IMG/VR virus record: IMGVR_UViG_3300047319_001872
Location: 124,001-188,000 of that record
DNA length: 64,000 nt
Strand: one strand, 5' to 3'
Made by a program: the position numbers and the translations under genes. Below the pieces are notes generated by a model that was given only the letters and a program-made list of their open reading frames with translations, was not told the origin of the DNA and did no database searches. This document shows, in pieces, positions 1,658-60,604 of this stretch. The first letter of the stretch is position 1. The number at the start of each line of letters is the position of its first letter.

Positions 1658-2662
1658 TTAGACGACGTGCGTGCCTTCGACTTCCCGTGCAATACGGGCG
1701 CGCGTACGACGCTGCAGGGCTTCGATCGCGGCGTTGATGTGATCCAGTGCTTCCTGGTTTTCGTCACAGGCGAACTTGCCGTCCTGGAAACCTTGCAGGC
1801 GATGACCGCAGGCCGCGAGCACAGCTTCGAGCGTGACGCCGTTCTGACCGACCACCGGCACCACACCGTTCTGGAACAACAGGTGCAGCATCAGGCTTTG
1901 GCCAGCGTAGCCTTCTTCCAACACCGACGGATGCGTTTCCGCATTGAAGCCCGAGAAGACGTAGTAGTGATTCGCACCGCTGACTTCGTTGGCGTTATCG
2001 CCGACGGCGACGAGCAGCTGCGTGTCTGCACCTTCGACCAGATGTTGGGTAATCACGGCACCCTTCTGGCGACCGAGGGCGCGCGCCTGCGCTTCCTGTT
2101 CCAGCCGCACAGCAGTATCTTCCGGTGACTCACACGGGTCGCCCAGATGATCGCCTGCTGCATCCGTTTCGTAAGCGGCAGTGATGACGATGTCTTCGAG
2201 CGGCACGTCTTGATGAAAGCCCCTGCTGCCGGTCTTCACCTGACGGATCGCGTCGATCACTTCTTCACCGACGATCACCTTGCCGAATACAGCGTAGCCC
2301 CAGCCTTGCGGCGACAGCGACGAGTGATTCAGGAAGTCGTTGTCGTTCACGTTGATGAAGAATTGCGCGGTTGCCGAATGCGGGTCGTTCGTGCGAGCCA
2401 TCGCGATCGTGTACAGTTCGTTCTTCAAACCGTTTTGCGCTTCGTTCGCGATCGGTGCATCCGTTTCGCGTTGGGTCTTCATGTTGGCTTCAAAGCCGCC
2501 GCCTTGCACCATGAAGCCGTTGATCACGCGATGGAAGATCAGACCGTTGTAATGGCCCTTGTTCACGTAAGCGAGGAAATTCGCGACAGTCTTGGGGGCA
2601 CGCTCATCGTCGAGCTCGACGAGGAAGTTACCCTTGGTGGTTTCGAATAGAGCGTGTTTCAT
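1658..2662 (-). CDS. cyclophilin-type peptidyl-prolyl isomerase fused to a C-terminal Tad1-like domain
   Basis: aa1-165 has [35 protein letters not shown] (PpiA/B family); aa~203-334 has [44 protein letters not shown] (Tad1 pattern). Confidence 0.85.
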
Positions 2663-17873: not shown

Positions 17874-19172
17874 TTAGGCTGAGTGATTGGGATGCTGGCC
17901 GCCCGCTGCCGCGCGGTAACGCGGGTGTTGCCAACCAGCTTCCTTCGCGACACCGTGCACCTTGCCCAACACGCCTTCCGAGTACTCCGGAGCGACGACC
18001 AGACCTTCCAGCGCACGCCACTTGTTGTACAGATCGACCAAGAAGCGCTTGACCATATACCGGATCGCCATGTTGTGCTTATGCAGGTCCGTCTTCTCAG
18101 CGTGGCGAGGATCGTTCTTCAGGCGGTTCTTGTAATTGTTGTAGATCACCGCATACGGGCTCGGTTCGACGACTACCGTGTGACCCTTGGCGCGCAGATA
18201 GATGATGACAGCTTGGTCTTCGTCCATCTCCGCGTAGTCCTTCGGATCAAAGCCTTCTTCCTTGGCCAGTTCCAGTCGACGGACTGCGCCGACCTTCTTG
18301 CCATCCACGGTGGAGATGCCTGCGCGCAAGAACGAGGTACCCGCCACACCGATCAGCTTAGTCTTCAGGAACGGGTTGAAGGTGATCGAATCCCGCAACG
18401 CCTGCTCGCCCTCGCGATTGGTGTATTCCTTCTGCACCAAACAGAAGTCGCGCCGCGAACGACCAACTGCCTCGAAGGTCACCGGGTACTTGCCTTCGGC
18501 GAGCATCGGCAGATCGAAGTTCTTGCTGTCGGCGTACCAGGCGTCGATTTCTTGCCCGCGCACGGTCTGCTCACGACCCTTGTCGTCGACGTACTTGCCA
18601 ATATGCACCACGTCCAGCCCAGCGAGCTTCCACAGGCTTGACGGATACTCGGCCTTGGTGATGTCGATTTCGGAGACGATGATGCCCGCCAAAGCCGGAC
18701 CAATGCCGCGCACCCCGGACAAGAACTCTGTGTAGATCGGGATCTTCTTCAGAATCCGCTCCATGTCCTTGAAGTGGTGCTCTTCGTTCTTGAGCGTGTT
18801 CAGGTAGTTATCCACCAGCAGCAGTTCGCTGTAGTGCGTGATGAGCTCGTCGCCCTTGAATTTCTTCTCGGTGGGAAGCTTAGCGGTCATCGTTTCGATG
18901 GCTTCTGTGGTGTCGTCGTGGTGCTCGTCGATGATGCCGTCAGTGATACGACGATAGGACTTGCGCAACTGCTCGAGCAGGTTCTTTTCCTGCTTCTCGA
19001 GTTCGGCCTCGCTCATGCCGTCCTGACGCAGACCGAGCTTGGCTTTGAAGCTGGCGGTCACGCGGTTCCCCATCTGAATGCGCAGACCCTGCATGTCGTA
19101 GGCTGAGCGCACCATGGTGCGAATCACAGCGAGATTCGGGTTGTAGGTCGGGGCGATGATCGGGGTATTCAT
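17874..19172 (-). CDS. tasA: TasA-like RNA-binding protein (Nop/IS110 C-terminal domain, no RuvC or HNH)
   Basis: Coiled-coil N-terminus (VRSAYDMQGLRIQMGNR), GVRGIGPALAG.IVSEID, SSLWKLAGLD, FNPFLKTKL, YAVIYNNYKNRL, HKHNMAIRYMVKRFLVDLY..WRALEGL; adjacent to a dual-repeat 36-nt array. Confidence 0.8.
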   Translation of the reverse strand: MNTPIIAPTYNPNLAVIRTMVRSAYDMQGLRIQMGNRVTASFKAKLGLRQDGMSEAELEKQEKNLLEQLRKSYRRITDGIIDEHHDDTTEAIETMTAKLPTEKKFKGDELITHYSELLLVDNYLNTLKNEEHHFKDMERILKKIPIYTEFLSGVRGIGPALAGIIVSEIDITKAEYPSSLWKLAGLDVVHIGKYVDDKGREQTVRGQEIDAWYADSKNFDLPMLAEGKYPVTFEAVGRSRRDFCLVQKEYTNREGEQALRDSITFNPFLKTKLIGVAGTSFLRAGISTVDGKKVGAVRRLELAKEEGFDPKDYAEMDEDQAVIIYLRAKGHTVVVEPSPYAVIYNNYKNRLKNDPRHAEKTDLHKHNMAIRYMVKRFLVDLYNKWRALEGLVVAPEYSEGVLGKVHGVAKEAGWQHPRYRAAAGGQHPNHSA

Positions 19173-19200
19173 GATTCGGTTTCCTTGTTTCAATTGTAAG

Positions 19201-56474: not shown

Positions 56475-56975
56475 TTACCCCACACGAACTGCTCGGGTCT
56501 GCAACTGCTCCCGAGCCTTCATGGTCAGGACACCACACAAGTTGGCACCTTTCCACTCATAGGGATTCTCGATACGGGGGTCGTCTTCATTGAGACCCAC
56601 GCCGTACACGGTATCGCGTTCGCTGGCTTCGACCAGGATGTCATTGCCCGTCTCAAGAAGCCACTGGCACTCCTGCGGGTTCTGACTATACTTCTCAAGC
56701 ATGCCAATGAGAATGAACTGCTCTCGCTTGGCCACCCACTCTGCATCGACGTAACCACGCACTTTGCGTCCTAAGACTTTCTGCGCTTGCGGGTTATCGG
56801 TCTTCAGAATGAGCTCCGCTACATCGTGGTCCTTAAAGAGCATCGCCTTGCAGTACATCATGAACTGCTCGAGCGACGAGAACGAAATGCCCTTCACTTT
56901 GAAGTGACAGATGTAGTGGTTCGACATGAAATCACGACGAGTGTAAAACGCCACGACGTTTCCCCATCGCCGCAT
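56475..56975 (-). CDS. NADAR (YbiA-like) family protein
   Basis: SSLEQFMMYCKA, KVLGRKVRG, KYSQN, LVEASERD..YGVG, WKGANLCG. Confidence 0.88.
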   Translation of the reverse strand: MRRWGNVVAFYTRRDFMSNHYICHFKVKGISFSSLEQFMMYCKAMLFKDHDVAELILKTDNPQAQKVLGRKVRGYVDAEWVAKREQFILIGMLEKYSQNPQECQWLLETGNDILVEASERDTVYGVGLNEDDPRIENPYEWKGANLCGVLTMKAREQLQTRAVRVG

Positions 56976-57494: not shown

Positions 57495-57586
57495 TTTAAT
57501 CTCGTTTTGAACAAAAAAAAAGAGGGATCGAAATCCCTCTTCCCCAGCCGCTACGTCTTTCGACGCAGCGACCAGTGGTAGACTAC

Positions 57587-59782
57587 TTAGAACTGATAAC
57601 CTGCCGAGACCACCGCACCGACGTCGCCGCGGGTGCTGGTGGACACGCCACCCTTCATGACCCAGCGATTGTCGCCCGTCACGTAGGAACCACCGACAGC
57701 GATACCTTGCTGACCGTGGTAGGTCGACACAGCGGCCGACAACATCCCGCTACCTGCACGGGTCGGTTGCGGCAAGCCTGCGATAGCCAGCACCGAAGCG
57801 AGGCCACCATAGGTGTCTTGCTTGTAGCTGTCCATCTGGTTTTGAAGAGCGTTCACACGCTGGTCCGTATAACCCATCGACTGTTGCTGCGCGAAGTTCA
57901 CTTGACCGACGTTCGCTGCATCGGTCGGTGCCGTACCTGCGGCGACGTGGGTGATCTGACGCTCGCTGCCCGCAGAACCCACCGAGATCGCGTTGTCACG
58001 ATCTGCCACCGAGTTCGCACCCAAGGCGACTGCGTTCTTTGCAGCCATCTTGGTGTTCGCACCCATCAACCCCTTGTCGATCGTGTTGATCGCTTGGGTG
58101 TTGCTCGTGACTTGCGATTGCAGACCAGCTTCTGCCGTCTGAGCCCGCGTCGTTTCGTTGTCGATCTTCGTATTCAGGCCGCTTTCAGCAGTCTGGGCAC
58201 GAGTCGATTCCGAATTGATGTTGGACTGCAGCTGACCTTCTGCGGCCGTAGCACGCGACGTTTCTGCACCGACTTGCTTGTTGGTGTAGGCGTTCGCCGA
58301 CGAGAGGGTCTTGGCCGACGAAGCATCGGTGTAAGCGGCCGAGGTAGCCACGGCGCCGACATAAGCTGCACCGGCTGCGGCATCAGCGTGAGCGTTGGCG
58401 GATGTCAGCGTAGCGGCGCTCGATGCGTCCGTGTAGCTTTCAGCCGTCGAAACACCCTTCGCTACAGCCTTGTCGGTGTACTTGTTGGCCGACTTAAGCG
58501 TAGCAGCATCGCCCGCTTGTTGTGCCGTTTGCAGATCGTGCGCGACGTTATTGGTGTAGTCGAACGACGTGTCAATCGCCGTTTGCGTGGCAGTCGCAAC
58601 TTCAGCGTGGGTCGCGCTGTTCGTTTGCAGGTCCGAGATAGCCGAGCTGTTTTGCTTGGACTGATTCAGCGCCGTGTTCGCGGTCGACTGGGCGTGTTGT
58701 GCATCGCCTTCAGCCTTGCCTGCCAGACCGAGTGCTGCACCGCCGACTACCAGGGCGGCATCTGCCGTACCTTGTGCATGCGAAGCAGCTTTACCGGCTG
58801 CTGCCGCAGCAGAACCAGCGGCCGTGGCTTTGGCATCTGCCGTAGCAGCGACTTGACCAGCCGCAGTCGCAGTCGACTGTGCCGAGGCTGCAGCAACTGC
58901 TGCACCTTCAGCGACACCTTCTGCATGACCTGCGACAATCGCCGCACCCGTTGCCGTGATCGCTGCGCCGATAGCAACGCCTTCGGCTTGTTGTGCAGTG
59001 ACCGAAGCGCCTTGCGCGATCGACTTCGCTTGTGCCGAGGTATCGACAGCAGCTTGCGAATTGGCGAGAGCTGTATTGGCCGTAGCCCCAACACCGTTGA
59101 CTTGCGACTGCAGGTTCGCTTCTGCACCGGTTGCGCGAGTAGCTTCGGCTGCGGTAGCAGCGGCGGCCGTCGATGCATTGGTGGTGATTTGACCTTGCAG
59201 ACCGGCTTCGGCGCCCTTCGCACGCGTCGCTTCAGCAGCGGTCGCGTTGGCTGCCGTGGTGGCGTTGGTGTTGACTTGCGTTTGCAGGCTGGCTTCCGCC
59301 GCTTTCGCGCGATTGGTTTCACCGGCGACTTGCGTGGTCGTGTAAGCGTTCTGCGCAGCAGCCGAGTCAGCGACTTCTTGATGCGTAGCGCTGTTCACTT
59401 GCAAGGCGGCGATCGCACCGCCTTGCTGGCTCACCTGACCTTGCAGCTGCGTGATGTTCGACGTGTTCGCAGCGACGTTGGTGTTCGTGCTGTTCAGCTG
59501 TGCCGAAGTCGCCAGACCCGAGACTGTACCCGAAACCGACGAACCGTTGGACAACGTCGAGGTGACCGTCGTGCCGCTGATGCTCACGCCGGTGACCGAG
59601 GCACCGTCCTTGCCTGCAGCGCCGGTAGCACCTGTGGCGCCCGTTGCACCGGTGTCACCCTTCGGACCTTGCGGGCCTTGTTCACCGCAGCCGAACAGGC
59701 CGCAGGATGCATGCGCACCGATCGAAACCGAAGCGAGCAAAGCGATGAGGAGGGCGTTCTTTTTGATGGCGTTCTTTTTCAT
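57587..59782 (-). CDS. YadA/Hia-type trimeric autotransporter adhesin with collagen-like segment
   Basis: Signal peptide; GEQGPQGPKGDTGATGATG; Ala-rich coiled stalk; AVALGANS...ISVG..RQITHVAAG..TDAANVGQ head/neck; C-terminal beta-anchor ending GYQF. Confidence 0.92.
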   Translation of the reverse strand: MKKNAIKKNALLIALLASVSIGAHASCGLFGCGEQGPQGPKGDTGATGATGATGAAGKDGASVTGVSISGTTVTSTLSNGSSVSGTVSGLATSAQLNSTNTNVAANTSNITQLQGQVSQQGGAIAALQVNSATHQEVADSAAAQNAYTTTQVAGETNRAKAAEASLQTQVNTNATTAANATAAEATRAKGAEAGLQGQITTNASTAAAATAAEATRATGAEANLQSQVNGVGATANTALANSQAAVDTSAQAKSIAQGASVTAQQAEGVAIGAAITATGAAIVAGHAEGVAEGAAVAAASAQSTATAAGQVAATADAKATAAGSAAAAAGKAASHAQGTADAALVVGGAALGLAGKAEGDAQHAQSTANTALNQSKQNSSAISDLQTNSATHAEVATATQTAIDTSFDYTNNVAHDLQTAQQAGDAATLKSANKYTDKAVAKGVSTAESYTDASSAATLTSANAHADAAAGAAYVGAVATSAAYTDASSAKTLSSANAYTNKQVGAETSRATAAEGQLQSNINSESTRAQTAESGLNTKIDNETTRAQTAEAGLQSQVTSNTQAINTIDKGLMGANTKMAAKNAVALGANSVADRDNAISVGSAGSERQITHVAAGTAPTDAANVGQVNFAQQQSMGYTDQRVNALQNQMDSYKQDTYGGLASVLAIAGLPQPTRAGSGMLSAAVSTYHGQQGIAVGGSYVTGDNRWVMKGGVSTSTRGDVGAVVSAGYQF

Positions 59783-59846
59783 GATGCGCTATTTTCCTAA
59801 AGGTAAGTGGTAACGACACGGTTGGCTTTGTTTCCAACTCACCTTT

Positions 59847-59872
59847 GTTATATAGGTCTGAGATTATCTTGG
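59847..59872 (-). promoter_or_regulatory. putative early promoter for the autotransporter gene
   Basis: CCTATATAAC, ~65 nt upstream of ATG 59782. Confidence 0.5.
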
Positions 59873-59879
59873 ATCGCCC

Positions 59880-60152
59880 TTATCGGGACGCCCGAGCCTT
59901 GAGCACATGCAGCACGCGTGTATTGCCCCGTACGCGTAAATTCACCATGCTACGATATTGCGCGTAGCACGCCATCCAGTCCTTGATCGCCTTGCGGTCC
60001 CAGAACCGTTCCTTGCCTTCCACCACCGTGGGTGACGGAAAGCGAACCGGTGCCTTTTCAGGACGCCTCAAATAGAGCTCGATCTTCTCTCGGCTCTTCT
60101 TGGTCAAGCGACACACATCCCCGATGGTCATTAACTTGACCTGTGCGTCCAC
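59880..60152 (-). CDS. AlpA/excisionase-like HTH protein
   Basis: MTIGDVCRLT...FPSP...RFWDRKAIKDW. Confidence 0.7.
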   Translation of the reverse strand: MDAQVKLMTIGDVCRLTKKSREKIELYLRRPEKAPVRFPSPTVVEGKERFWDRKAIKDWMACYAQYRSMVNLRVRGNTRVLHVLKARASR

Positions 60153-60160
60153 AACTTTCC

Positions 60161-60604
60161 CTACTGGTTAAACACGTACTCAAGCTTCCCCGCTCGGTAC
60201 ATGCCCTTTTCGACTTTGGTCAGATCGAAATCGAACAGATTGATAAACGGACGGGAGAACTGGTGAAACATCTCTTCAGCCACGGTACAGCTGGGCTTGT
60301 CGTCGTCCAATTGAACGAGCATTTTTTCAACGAGATGAATCCCGGTTCCCCGCTTCTGGTATTCCGGTAACACCCGCACGCAGCGCAGCTTAGTCTCGTG
60401 CGCGTTCTTCTTACCCAACGCCACGCCAATGACTTGGTGCTTATCCTTGGCGAGTATCAGGATGTCATGCCCGACCATGACGCCGGGCATGACTTTGTTG
60501 GTGAACCAGTAGCTAAAGTCCGGATAGAGAATATCCATGCCGTGCAGTAGCTTACCAGCTTCCAAGGTGTCGACGAGACGTGTGCCTTGCTCGTAGCGAA
60601 TCAT
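60161..60604 (-). CDS. GNAT acetyltransferase
   Basis: KLRCVRVLPEYQKRGTGIHL (motif A). Confidence 0.8.
   Translation of the reverse strand: MIRYEQGTRLVDTLEAGKLLHGMDILYPDFSYWFTNKVMPGVMVGHDILILAKDKHQVIGVALGKKNAHETKLRCVRVLPEYQKRGTGIHLVEKMLVQLDDDKPSCTVAEEMFHQFSRPFINLFDFDLTKVEKGMYRAGKLEYVFNQ

What the first reader, a model, noticed from the sequence alone, without database searches (positions are those of the whole stretch)
57587..59872. Phage-encoded trimeric autotransporter adhesin with collagen segment, behind an early-type promoter
Seen: 731 aa with a signal peptide, ~9 Gly-X-Y triplets, a stalk of 29-aa (E.TRA..AEA.LQ.Q) and 18-aa repeats, a YadA head/neck and a C-terminal beta-barrel anchor. 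The recurring promoter motif sits just upstream. Established: trimeric autotransporters are outer-membrane adhesins, common in Burkholderia. Inference: a probably lytic jumbo phage remodels the infected cell surface early, for aggregation with new hosts, receptor masking or superinfection exclusion.
Basis: partly seen in the sequence, partly recalled or inferred. Interest (0 to 1): 0.65.

Follow-up and report, generated by a model that had tools for sequence, protein, structure and literature searches.

The report
Jumbo-phage early-gene trimeric autotransporter fibre
A lytic, nucleus-forming giant phage of Burkholderia-type hosts carries an intact outer-membrane adhesin gene with the same early promoter type as its nuclear-shell gene, so the virus probably coats the infected cell with its own fibres soon after infection; what the coat does is untested.

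Summary
It has a signal peptide, a Cys pair, 10 Gly-X-Y triplets, a largely helical stalk with 3x29-aa and 3x18-aa repeats, a sub-threshold head repeat, a YadA neck and a YadA anchor. A model of residues 560-731 as a trimer scores 0.85 against 0.02 for the best control.

The window belongs to a complete 313-kb phage with terminal repeats. That phage encodes chimallin and split RNA polymerase subunits and has no integrase hit. Its closest isolate is Burkholderia phage FLC9.

The upstream motif is real. It has 23 sites in the genome, all on one strand, and fits the published phiKZ-type early promoter consensus. It also precedes the chimallin gene and an RNAP beta gene. A strong terminator follows the adhesin gene.

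The gene is syntenic in FLC9 and five jumbo-size IMG/VR contigs found with the full protein, with dN/dS about 0.2. It is not an assembly chimera.

The neck and anchor are closest to Burkholderia cepacia complex adhesins. The stalk repeats are of phage tail-fibre type and are absent from 80 bacterial adhesin loci.

Early surface display is well supported. The purpose (exclusion or shielding versus aggregation) is inference only. I rate it a new variant of a known kind.

The parts
59835..59879 (-). Early-type promoter motif. The core CCTATATAAC lies at 59847..59856, with upstream GAT.CAA and TCAG elements and a downstream GTGAG.
   Evidence: One of 23 weight-matrix sites in the genome, all on the minus strand; 0 on the plus strand and 0 in a shuffle. 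Conserved upstream of the orthologues in FLC9, L008, L009 and L011. Matches the published phiKZ / 201phi2-1 early consensus. The same motif precedes the chimallin and RNAP beta genes.
59783..59834 (-). Presumed 5' leader with a weak AGGA Shine-Dalgarno about 14 nt before the ATG.
   Evidence: Read from the sequence. The transcription start site has not been mapped.
57587..59782 (-). Coding sequence of the 731-aa trimeric autotransporter (P0001), stop codon included.
   Evidence: dN/dS is 0.18-0.23 against five orthologues.
59708..59782 (-). Sec signal peptide, aa 1-25, with an AxA cleavage motif. The n-region holds a 15-nt tandem duplication (KKNA twice).
   Evidence: The AxA motif is conserved in all orthologues. 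No signal-peptide predictor was available.
59687..59707 (-). Mature N-terminus with the Cys pair (C27, C32).
   Evidence: Both Cys residues are invariant in 7 aligned relatives. A disulfide loop or knot is inference.
59597..59686 (-). Collagen-like tract, 10 Gly-X-Y triplets (aa 33-62).
   Evidence: Its length varies between orthologues and it is absent in FLC9 and L008. A 9-nt in-frame deletion at 59631 occurs in a natural variant.
59507..59596 (-). Short Ser/Thr/Gly/Val-rich beta segment, aa 63-92.
   Evidence: Conserved across the FLC9-like orthologues. Strands at aa 63-86 appear in a low-confidence model.
58070..59506 (-). Largely helical stalk, aa 93-571: Ala-rich, presumably a trimeric coiled coil. 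It includes the 29-aa repeats (59063..59323) and the 18-aa repeats (58106..58267).
   Evidence: The ExxRAxxAExxL repeat is shared with real phage tail fibres. It is absent from 80 bacterial adhesin loci.
57974..58039 (-). Vestigial YadA head repeat, aa 582-603.
   Evidence: PF05658 at 22 bits, below the 25-bit cut-off.
57839..57958 (-). Neck (YadA_stalk, PF05662), aa 609-648.
   Evidence: 35.3 bits against a 28.4 cut-off. Dense inter-chain contacts in the trimer model.
57590..57772 (-). YadA-like membrane anchor, aa 671-731, ending in Tyr-Gln-Phe.
   Evidence: PF03895, E 2.6e-15. Sequence match to the solved Hia translocator, 2gr7 and 3emo. Trimer model scores 0.85 against 0.02 for the best control.
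57506..57545 (-). Intrinsic terminator: 13-bp stem and a run of T.
   Evidence: A comparable hairpin plus T-run lies downstream of all five IMG/VR orthologues.

Best explanation
The gene encodes a working type Vc (trimeric autotransporter) outer-membrane fibre. It belongs to a lytic, nucleus-forming jumbo phage whose host is probably Burkholderia.

Proposed course of events:
1. The gene is a stand-alone unit of early promoter, ORF and terminator. The injected virion RNA polymerase reads it within minutes of infection, like the chimallin gene.
2. The mRNA is translated in the cytoplasm.
3. The signal peptide takes the protein through Sec.
4. The host BAM machinery inserts three four-stranded anchors as one 12-stranded barrel.
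5. The passenger threads out and zips into a trimeric stalk. This assumes the roughly 480 helical residues form a coiled coil, which would be on the order of 70 nm long. The stalk is tipped by a short collagen triple helix and a Cys pair.

The protein is a mosaic. The neck and anchor are of Burkholderia type. The shaft is made of phage tail-fibre repeats.

Most likely role (inference): 'lytic conversion' of the cell surface. A fibre coat would hinder further phage adsorption to the infected cell and to its debris after lysis.

Shown in silico: the architecture, trimer compatibility, phage origin, conservation under purifying selection, and the promoter class. Inferred: the timing, the export, the fibre length and the purpose.
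For: Family membership:
- YadA anchor and neck score above the Pfam cut-offs.
- Partial NCBIfam matches to BimA, YadA and EmaA.
- Sequence matches to solved adhesin fragments SadA, BpaC, Hia and YadA over aa 505-731.
- The trimer model of aa 560-731 scores 0.85 against 0.02 for the best of 3 controls, with partner pLDDT 91 and at least 97% contact agreement between runs. In the tool's calibration that mark was reached by 21 of 30 proteins solved as pairs and 0 of 23 solved as single chains.

Phage origin and type:
- Complete 313,315-bp virus record with terminal repeats.
- Chimallin, phrog_4795, E 3.8e-109, and RNAP beta, phrog_3295.
- RNAP beta and beta-prime Pfam hits.
- No integrase hit.

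Promoter:
- 23 one-strand sites against 0 in the controls.
- Fits the phiKZ TATATTAC and 201phi2-1 consensus.
- A review states that such motifs are early promoters read by the virion RNAP wherever they have been tested (PMC7598289).
- A terminator lies directly downstream.

Conservation:
- Syntenic orthologues in FLC9 and five jumbo-size IMG/VR contigs found with the full protein, each with a promoter-like motif and a terminator.
- dN/dS 0.18-0.23.
- A scan with the C-terminal profile adds further viral contigs.

Mosaic origin.

Precedent: T5 Llp is an outer-membrane protein made early by a lytic phage to exclude superinfection (PMC9586334).
Against: - There are no transcript, protein or localisation data. 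All 16 runs holding the gene are DNA metagenomes.
- The transcription start has not been mapped.
- The trimer pass may reflect the model's memory of solved adhesin anchors.
- The full-length monomer model is poor, pLDDT 46.7.
- The collagen tract is short, below the Pfam cut-off, and absent in FLC9 and L008, so it is dispensable.
- There is no recognisable ligand-binding head.
- No similarity to any known exclusion protein was found.
- A steric-shield role is pure inference. Such a role would also have to spare the phage's own release.
Confidence: 0.6

Rival explanations
1. Same protein and same early display, but its purpose is adhesion. The fibres make infected cells stick to uninfected neighbours, to each other or to surfaces such as roots, so that progeny are released next to new hosts.
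For: Autoaggregation and co-aggregation are common adhesin phenotypes (abstracts of PMC7568254 and PMC6605025, listed). The gene occurs in rhizosphere metagenomes. The distal tip (collagen tract, Cys pair) varies quickly between relatives, as expected for a binding end.
Against: The globular head, which usually mediates adhesin self-association, is vestigial here. The collagen tip is missing in FLC9 and L008. No ligand can be named.
Confidence: 0.25
2. It is a virion fibre. The tail-fibre-type shaft is the real function, and the anchor-like end serves only as a trimerisation or folding module.
For: The ExxRAxxAExxL repeats are those of annotated tail fibres. One PHROG labelled 'tail protein' matches aa 545-728. 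YadA-type domains have been reported in structural operons of pelagimyophages (PMC7029224).
Against: The Sec signal peptide is conserved in every relative. The anchor is complete, ends in an aromatic residue and is closest to chromosomal Burkholderia adhesins. The promoter is of the early class shared with chimallin, not a late one. The gene sits among small non-structural ORFs.
Confidence: 0.05
3. It is a recent passenger gene picked up from the host with no role for the phage, or an assembly chimera with host DNA.
For: The neck and anchor are 62-64% identical to Burkholderia cepacia complex adhesins. Local G+C is 0.60, against about 0.55 for the rest of the window.
Against: It is conserved in synteny in an isolated phage and in five jumbo-size IMG/VR contigs at 51-80% identity, under purifying selection. 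It has its own phage-type promoter. Contigs of 68-73 kb from separate runs span the gene and both flanks. The passenger has no bacterial counterpart.
Confidence: 0.04

Closest known systems
Classical bacterial trimeric autotransporter adhesins (YadA, Hia, SadA; Burkholderia BpaA, BpaC and BimA)
   Same: Signal peptide, neck, coiled-coil stalk, four-strand C-terminal anchor ending in an aromatic residue, and a predicted obligate trimer. The nearest anchors are in the Burkholderia cepacia complex.
   Different: It is encoded by a lytic jumbo phage behind a phage promoter. The head is vestigial. The stalk is made of phage tail-fibre repeats that occur in none of 80 bacterial adhesin loci. An N-terminal collagen tip is present.
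Eib immunoglobulin-binding adhesins of E. coli, carried on prophages
   Same: These are trimeric autotransporters carried by phage genomes (PMC3153244).
   Different: Eib genes sit on temperate prophages. That they are expressed by the lysogen as conversion genes is from my own knowledge and was not checked. Here the carrier has chimallin, its own RNA polymerases and no integrase hit, and the gene has an early lytic promoter. The matches to E. coli adhesins in the protein search were low-identity and partial (31-32% over about 27% of the query); the Eib proteins themselves were not compared.
T5 Llp (and the Cor-type lipoproteins): outer-membrane proteins made early by a lytic phage for superinfection exclusion
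   Same: A lytic phage makes an envelope protein early, which prevents re-adsorption to infected cells and debris (PMC9586334). This is the nearest functional analogue for the proposed role.
   Different: No homology. Llp is a small lipoprotein that jams one receptor from the periplasmic side. This is a 731-aa surface fibre, and any exclusion it gives would be steric. That role is untested.
phiKZ-type early promoters read by the virion RNA polymerase
   Same: A conserved AT-rich core (TATAT[A/T]AC) with an upstream TTTCAR element, lying upstream of the chimallin and RNAP genes.
   Different: The flanks are specific to this phage (GATTCAAA upstream, GTGAG downstream). Only 23 copies were found, all on one strand. 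No start sites have been mapped.
Collagen-containing adhesins (Haemophilus parasuis VtaA; BCSR5 gene product P0093; Acinetobacter johnsonii P0057)
   Same: Gly-X-Y tracts inside an adhesin passenger. The VtaA case is from my own knowledge and from the paper list.
   Different: Here the tract is only 10 triplets long, sits at the extreme mature N-terminus next to a Cys pair, and changes length or is absent among close relatives.

Membership tests
Trimeric autotransporter adhesin (type Vc secretion) | C-terminal YadA-like anchor (PF03895) with four beta strands and a terminal aromatic residue | tested here: met
   E 2.6e-15, 56.7 bits against a 22.7 cut-off, aa 671-731. The protein ends in Tyr-Gln-Phe. 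Sequence match to the Hia translocator 2gr7 and 3emo.
Trimeric autotransporter adhesin (type Vc secretion) | N-terminal Sec signal peptide | tested here: met
   Read by eye: Lys-rich n-region, hydrophobic core, AxA site, conserved in all relatives. No predictor was run.
Trimeric autotransporter adhesin (type Vc secretion) | Homotrimer: three chains form one barrel, and the neck and coiled coil interlock | tested here: met
   In silico only. Score 0.85 against 0.02 for the best of 3 controls, partner pLDDT 91, at least 97% contact agreement between runs. In the tool's calibration the mark was reached by 21 of 30 proteins solved as pairs and 0 of 23 solved as single chains. The pass may be from memory of solved anchors.
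Trimeric autotransporter adhesin (type Vc secretion) | Neck or stalk connector (PF05662) | tested here: met
   aa 609-648, 35.3 bits against a 28.4 cut-off.
Trimeric autotransporter adhesin (type Vc secretion) | YadA-type head repeats (PF05658); common but not obligatory | tested here: inconclusive
   One repeat pair at aa 582-603, 22 bits against a 25 cut-off.
Trimeric autotransporter adhesin (type Vc secretion) | Outer-membrane localisation and adhesive activity | not testable with these tools
   Needs fractionation, surface shaving and binding assays.
Collagen triple-helix repeat protein | Uninterrupted Gly-X-Y tract long enough to form a stable triple helix | tested here: inconclusive
   10 triplets. 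Pfam Collagen scores 20.1 bits against a 27.2 cut-off. The tract lies on an obligately trimeric protein, which would favour folding (inference). It is absent in FLC9 and L008.
phiKZ-like early promoter (read by the virion RNA polymerase) | Conserved AT-rich core of about 10 nt, recurring upstream of presumed early operons | tested here: met
   23 sites on one strand, 0 in the controls. The core is TATAT[A/T/C]AC against TATATTAC in phiKZ. Definition taken from PMC7598289.
phiKZ-like early promoter (read by the virion RNA polymerase) | Precedes known early genes (chimallin, RNAP subunits) | tested here: met
   Sites lie upstream of the chimallin and RNAP beta ORFs. Whether that RNAP gene belongs to the non-virion set was not determined.
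phiKZ-like early promoter (read by the virion RNA polymerase) | Early, host-RNAP-independent transcription starting about 10 nt after the core | not testable with these tools
   No RNA runs hold the sequence.
Nucleus-forming jumbo phages (Chimalliviridae) | Chimallin shell protein and split multisubunit RNA polymerases | tested here: met
   phrog_4795, E 3.8e-109; phrog_3295, E 8.4e-227. PF00562 and PF00623 hits. PhuZ and the rest of the core gene set were not tested.
Prophage-borne conversion adhesins (Eib type) | Carried by a temperate, integrating phage | tested here: not met
   No PF00589 integrase hit in the complete genome. The phage has chimallivirus hallmark genes.
Superinfection-exclusion proteins (Llp and Cor type) | Sequence similarity to a known exclusion protein, or a demonstrated block of adsorption or injection | not tested
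   The Pfam, NCBIfam and PHROG scans returned no exclusion family. The PADLOC library was not run. Function would need a bench test.

The most novel reading that the evidence does not exclude
Display of a phage-built fibre on the infected cell may be a recurrent strategy of large soil phages. The fibre has a tail-fibre-type shaft grafted onto a host-type autotransporter anchor. It appears in chimalliviruses of the FLC9 group. It also appears, apparently independently, in BCSR5, in a 217-kb phage record and in phage records of about 523 kb, none of which gave a chimallin match. It would give these viruses a programmable surface organelle on the living host, used early for exclusion of rival phages or for contact-dependent spread to neighbouring cells.
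Probability: 0.3. Interest if true: 0.75.

Novelty: new variant of a known kind. Interest (0 to 1): 0.6.

Why it matters
Lytic phages are known to alter the envelope with small lipoproteins or inner-membrane proteins. A full type Vc adhesin in the early regulon of a nucleus-forming jumbo phage would be a much larger intervention, and it depends on the host Sec and BAM machinery staying active during takeover.

It gives a concrete, testable handle on how jumbo phages manage superinfection, debris loss or spatial spread in soil and rhizosphere.

It bears on biocontrol, because FLC9 is a candidate agent against rice seedling rot (PMC11898562).

It is also a clear natural example of module exchange between tail fibres and bacterial adhesins.

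Tried and rejected
- Chimera with host DNA: rejected.
- Lipoprotein reading of the N-terminal Cys: rejected. The residue before the Cys is Asn, Ser or Asp in the aligned FLC9-like relatives and P0002, and all of these have an AxA signal-peptidase I site.
- Passenger copied from the phage's own fibre genes: rejected. tblastn of aa 27-610 against the genome gave only low-complexity hits of about 25% identity. No other ORF has the ExxRAxxAExxL motif or a true collagen tract.
- Sigma-70 promoter upstream: the consensus scan found none there.
- Genome-wide 8-mer enrichment: did not reveal the motif, because it has few copies. The seeded weight-matrix search did.
- The 741-aa ORF on the plus strand (57575..59800): treated as a mirror artefact of the Ala/Gly/Thr-rich gene. 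All family and orthologue evidence is on the minus strand.
- Full-length monomer fold: too poor for a fold search (pLDDT 46.7), so no fold search was run.
- RNA evidence: none available.
- Literature: no paper in the library describes a complete autotransporter adhesin in a jumbo phage. This shows absence from that library, not proof of novelty.
- Link between the window's cyclophilin gene and collagen or outer-membrane folding: dropped, because it has no signal peptide.
- The exhaustive protein-representative search was not used, since the family was already clear.
- No alternative genetic code was used.
Full report
**1. What is there**

The window holds a 731-aa ORF at 57587..59782 on the minus strand. 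From N to C, reading the translation:
- A Sec-type signal peptide, aa 1-25: Lys-rich start, hydrophobic core, Ala-His-Ala before the cut.
- A Cys pair, C27 and C32.
- Ten uninterrupted Gly-X-Y triplets, aa 33-62.
- A short Ser/Thr/Val/Gly-rich segment, aa 63-92.
- A long Ala-rich stretch, aa 93-571.
- A vestigial head repeat, a neck, a short coiled coil and the anchor.

The long stretch holds three 29-aa repeats (aa 154-240) and three 18-aa repeats (aa 506-559). Both repeat types are built on the motif ExxRAxxAExxL.

Pfam places YadA_anchor at aa 671-731 (E 2.6e-15, 56.7 bits against a 22.7 cut-off). Scanning the C-terminal part alone gives YadA_stalk (the neck) at aa 609-648 (35.3 bits against 28.4). 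YadA_head at aa 582-603 reaches only 22 bits against 25. Pfam Collagen stays below its cut-off (20.1 against 27.2) because the tract is short. NCBIfam gives partial matches to BimA, EmaA and YadA. The PDB sequence search finds SadA, BpaC, Hia and YadA fragments over aa 505-731.

A three-copy model of aa 560-731 scores 0.85, against 0.02 for the best of three controls. Partner pLDDT is 91 and the runs agree in at least 97% of contacts. In the tool's calibration this mark was reached by 21 of 30 proteins solved as pairs and by 0 of 23 solved as single chains. That calibration used two copies, and the pass may come from memory of solved anchors.

The full-length monomer model is poor (pLDDT 46.7). 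It shows strands at aa 63-86 and largely continuous helix (four short breaks) from aa 93 to 571. If that helix is a coiled coil, the stalk would be on the order of 70 nm long. This is an inference.

The corrections are the strand, the triplet count and the weakness of the 'head'.

**2. The carrier is a complete, lytic-type jumbo phage**

The window is bases 124001-188000 of a 313,315-bp virus record with direct terminal repeats, rated complete by CheckV. The record holds exactly one YadA anchor.

The genome encodes split RNA polymerase beta and beta-prime homologues. It also encodes a chimallin (nuclear shell) protein, phrog_4795, E 3.8e-109, and an RNAP beta subunit, phrog_3295, E 8.4e-227. 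No tyrosine integrase was found.

The closest isolate is Burkholderia phage FLC9, 321.8 kb, host B. glumae. DNA identity is patchy at 73-77%.

The gene is not an assembly artefact:
- FLC9 gp240 (721 aa) lies in the same gene order.
- Five IMG/VR contigs of 172-315 kb carry full-length orthologues.
- Logan contigs of 68-73 kb from separate rhizosphere metagenomes span the gene and both flanks. One variant has 90 substitutions and a 9-nt in-frame deletion inside the Gly-X-Y tract.

Pairwise dN/dS against five orthologues is 0.18-0.23. It is similar in the N-terminal, middle and C-terminal thirds, apart from 0.41 for the N-terminal third against FLC9. The whole protein is therefore under purifying selection.

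**3. The promoter motif is real and of the early class**

The 10-mer CCTATATAAC lies about 65 nt before the ATG. It occurs four times in the genome, always on the minus strand and always upstream of an ORF. Relaxing one position gives 11 sites on the minus strand, with a shared 45-nt context. An iterated weight matrix finds 23 sites. All are on the minus strand, none on the plus strand, and none in a shuffled genome. The iteration is partly circular, but the strand and shuffle controls are not.

The motif (an upstream GATTCAAA, then TTTCAG, then [C/A]TATAT[A/T/C]AC, often followed by GTGAG) fits a published table of predicted early promoters. That table lists TATATTAC for phiKZ and a longer 201phi2-1 consensus with TTTRARR before the core and GTG after it (PMC7058600).

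A review states that every RNAP-encoding jumbo phage has such a conserved AT-rich motif of about 10 nt upstream of early operons. Wherever it has been tested, it is the early promoter read by the injected virion polymerase. The review also states that the non-virion polymerase genes are themselves early (PMC7598289).

In this genome the same motif precedes the chimallin gene and an RNAP beta gene. [quoted passage not shown]

The motif is conserved upstream of the orthologue in FLC9, L008, L009 and L011. Variant cores are present in L010 and L012. A 13-bp hairpin with a T-run follows the stop codon, and similar hairpins follow all five IMG/VR orthologues. The gene therefore looks like a stand-alone early transcription unit. 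Timing itself is not shown, because no RNA run holds the sequence.

**4. Origin: a mosaic**

The last 150 residues (neck plus anchor) are 62-64% identical to adhesins of the Burkholderia cepacia complex (B. orbicola, latens, arboris, lata, contaminans, diffusa, stagnalis). They are about 50% identical to those of Caballeronia, Collimonas and Paraburkholderia.

In a quick maximum-likelihood tree:
- The seven FLC9-like phage proteins form one clade (support 100).
- That clade groups (support 94, below the tool's 95 star mark) with two proteins from phage-like metagenome contigs, with BCSR5 and with nine B. cepacia complex proteins.

This fits a Burkholderia host and a host origin for the anchor module. 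The direction of transfer is inferred from the overwhelmingly bacterial distribution of the family.

The passenger is different. Bacterial hits cover only the C-terminal 20-30% of the query. The ExxRAxxAExxL repeat occurs in the phage-borne adhesins and in genuine tail fibres. One example is the annotated tail fibre of Vibrio phage SRILMA, with six 18-aa repeats of the same period. Anchor-less proteins P0013, P0073, P0079 and P0090 also carry it. It occurs in none of 80 bacterial adhesin loci, and none of those has six or more Gly-X-Y triplets. It is not copied from another gene of this phage.

**5. Spread among phages**

Among 50,697 phage records, tblastn finds the anchor in FLC9 and in Burkholderia phage BCSR5. 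The remaining anchor hits are Salmonella genome contigs and metagenome-assembled Acinetobacter phage records.

BCSR5 (227 kb) gave no chimallin match. Its 1261-aa protein is a classical head-neck-rich adhesin with a collagen tract just before the anchor.

The best full-length relative outside the FLC9 group is P0002, at 38% identity over 87% of the query. It sits on a 523,572-bp metagenome contig among small unidirectional ORFs that mostly lack any family hit.

A scan with the C-terminal profile adds IMG/VR records of 245, 159, 218 and 523.8 kb and several smaller ones. Chimallin is found in the 245-kb record but not in the complete 218-kb and 523.8-kb records.

P0005 (431 aa, collagen plus anchor) lies on a 42-kb phage-like contig, behind a perfect TTGACA, 17-nt spacer, TATAAT promoter.

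The architecture 'signal peptide, Cys pair, optional collagen, fibre-type coiled coil, anchor' therefore recurs in unrelated large phages.

**6. How it most likely works**

Shown in silico: a complete type Vc autotransporter, trimer-compatible, phage-borne, conserved, and behind an early-class promoter.

Inferred:
- The virion polymerase transcribes it at once.
- The protein uses host Sec and BAM.
- Infected cells carry long trimeric fibres with the N-terminal collagen and Cys tip outermost. In this family the N-terminus is the distal end (established knowledge).

The purpose cannot be read from the sequence. I rank a surface-shield or superinfection-exclusion role first. The precedent is T5 Llp, an outer-membrane protein made early by a lytic phage to stop re-adsorption to infected cells and debris (PMC9586334). 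The head that usually mediates adhesin self-association is vestigial here. Adhesion or aggregation is a close second. A virion-fibre role is unlikely given the signal peptide, the intact anchor and the early promoter.

**7. Comparison and novelty**

Autotransporter adhesins on temperate prophages are known: the eib genes of E. coli (PMC3153244). Collagen tracts inside such adhesins are also known. The phiKZ-type early promoters are known too.

I did not find the following described in the searched literature:
- A complete adhesin of this kind in a lytic nucleus-forming jumbo phage.
- Such a gene placed in the early regulon.
- A passenger built from tail-fibre repeats.

I file it as a new variant of a known kind, with interest 0.6.

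**Limits**
- No expression or localisation data.
- No start-site mapping.
- Signal peptide judged by eye.
- The tree was made by the quick method.
- The exhaustive protein search was deliberately not run.

Noticed in passing
window 56475-56975 (-): A 166-aa NADAR-domain protein (PF08719, E 1.2e-40) lies two to three genes downstream of the adhesin gene. From my own knowledge, NADAR enzymes remove ADP-ribose from nucleic-acid bases, so this may be a counter-defence gene.
   Followed up: no
window 60161-60604 (-): A 147-aa GNAT-type acetyltransferase lies two genes upstream of the adhesin gene. PF00583 scores 23.8 bits against a 20.7 cut-off.
   Followed up: no
window 1658-2662 (-): A 334-aa fusion protein: a cyclophilin-type prolyl isomerase (PF00160, E 4.6e-45, aa 6-163) joined to a phage-specific C-terminal domain (phrog_23843 and phrog_2428). 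It has no signal peptide, so it is cytoplasmic, and no link to folding of the adhesin is supported.
   Followed up: partly
window 57575-59800 (+): A 741-aa open frame lies exactly antisense to the adhesin gene. It has no family or orthologue support and is most likely a by-product of the Ala/Gly/Thr-rich codon usage.
   Followed up: partly
window 59753-59783 (-): A 15-nt tandem duplication in the first codons doubles the KKNA motif of the signal-peptide n-region. L010, L012 and P0002 lack the second copy.
   Followed up: partly
window 59597-59686, place 59631: A natural variant in another rhizosphere metagenome has a 9-nt in-frame deletion in the Gly-X-Y tract. Substitutions cluster at 58282-58352 in the Ala-rich stalk, which suggests recombination or rapid change of modules.
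   Followed up: partly
window 17874-19193 (-): A 439-aa ORF matches phrog_4285, labelled 'transposase' (E 1.5e-26), but has no Pfam hit. It may be a mobile element inside the phage genome.
   Followed up: no
G000:C1 294688-296598 (-) and 280889-283189 (-), outside the window: The chimallin (nuclear shell) and RNAP beta genes each lie behind the same early-type motif. This places the phage among the nucleus-forming jumbo phages.
   Followed up: yes
L005 1690-1725: The 431-aa collagen-plus-anchor homologue on a 42-kb phage-like contig lies behind a perfect TTGACA, 17-nt spacer, TATAAT promoter. An AcrVA2-like gene and an ADP-ribosylglycohydrolase gene are nearby.
   Followed up: partly
window 59880-60152 (-): A 90-aa ORF directly upstream of the promoter has no family hit. 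By eye it resembles small AlpA or excisionase-type DNA-binding proteins. This was not tested.
   Followed up: no
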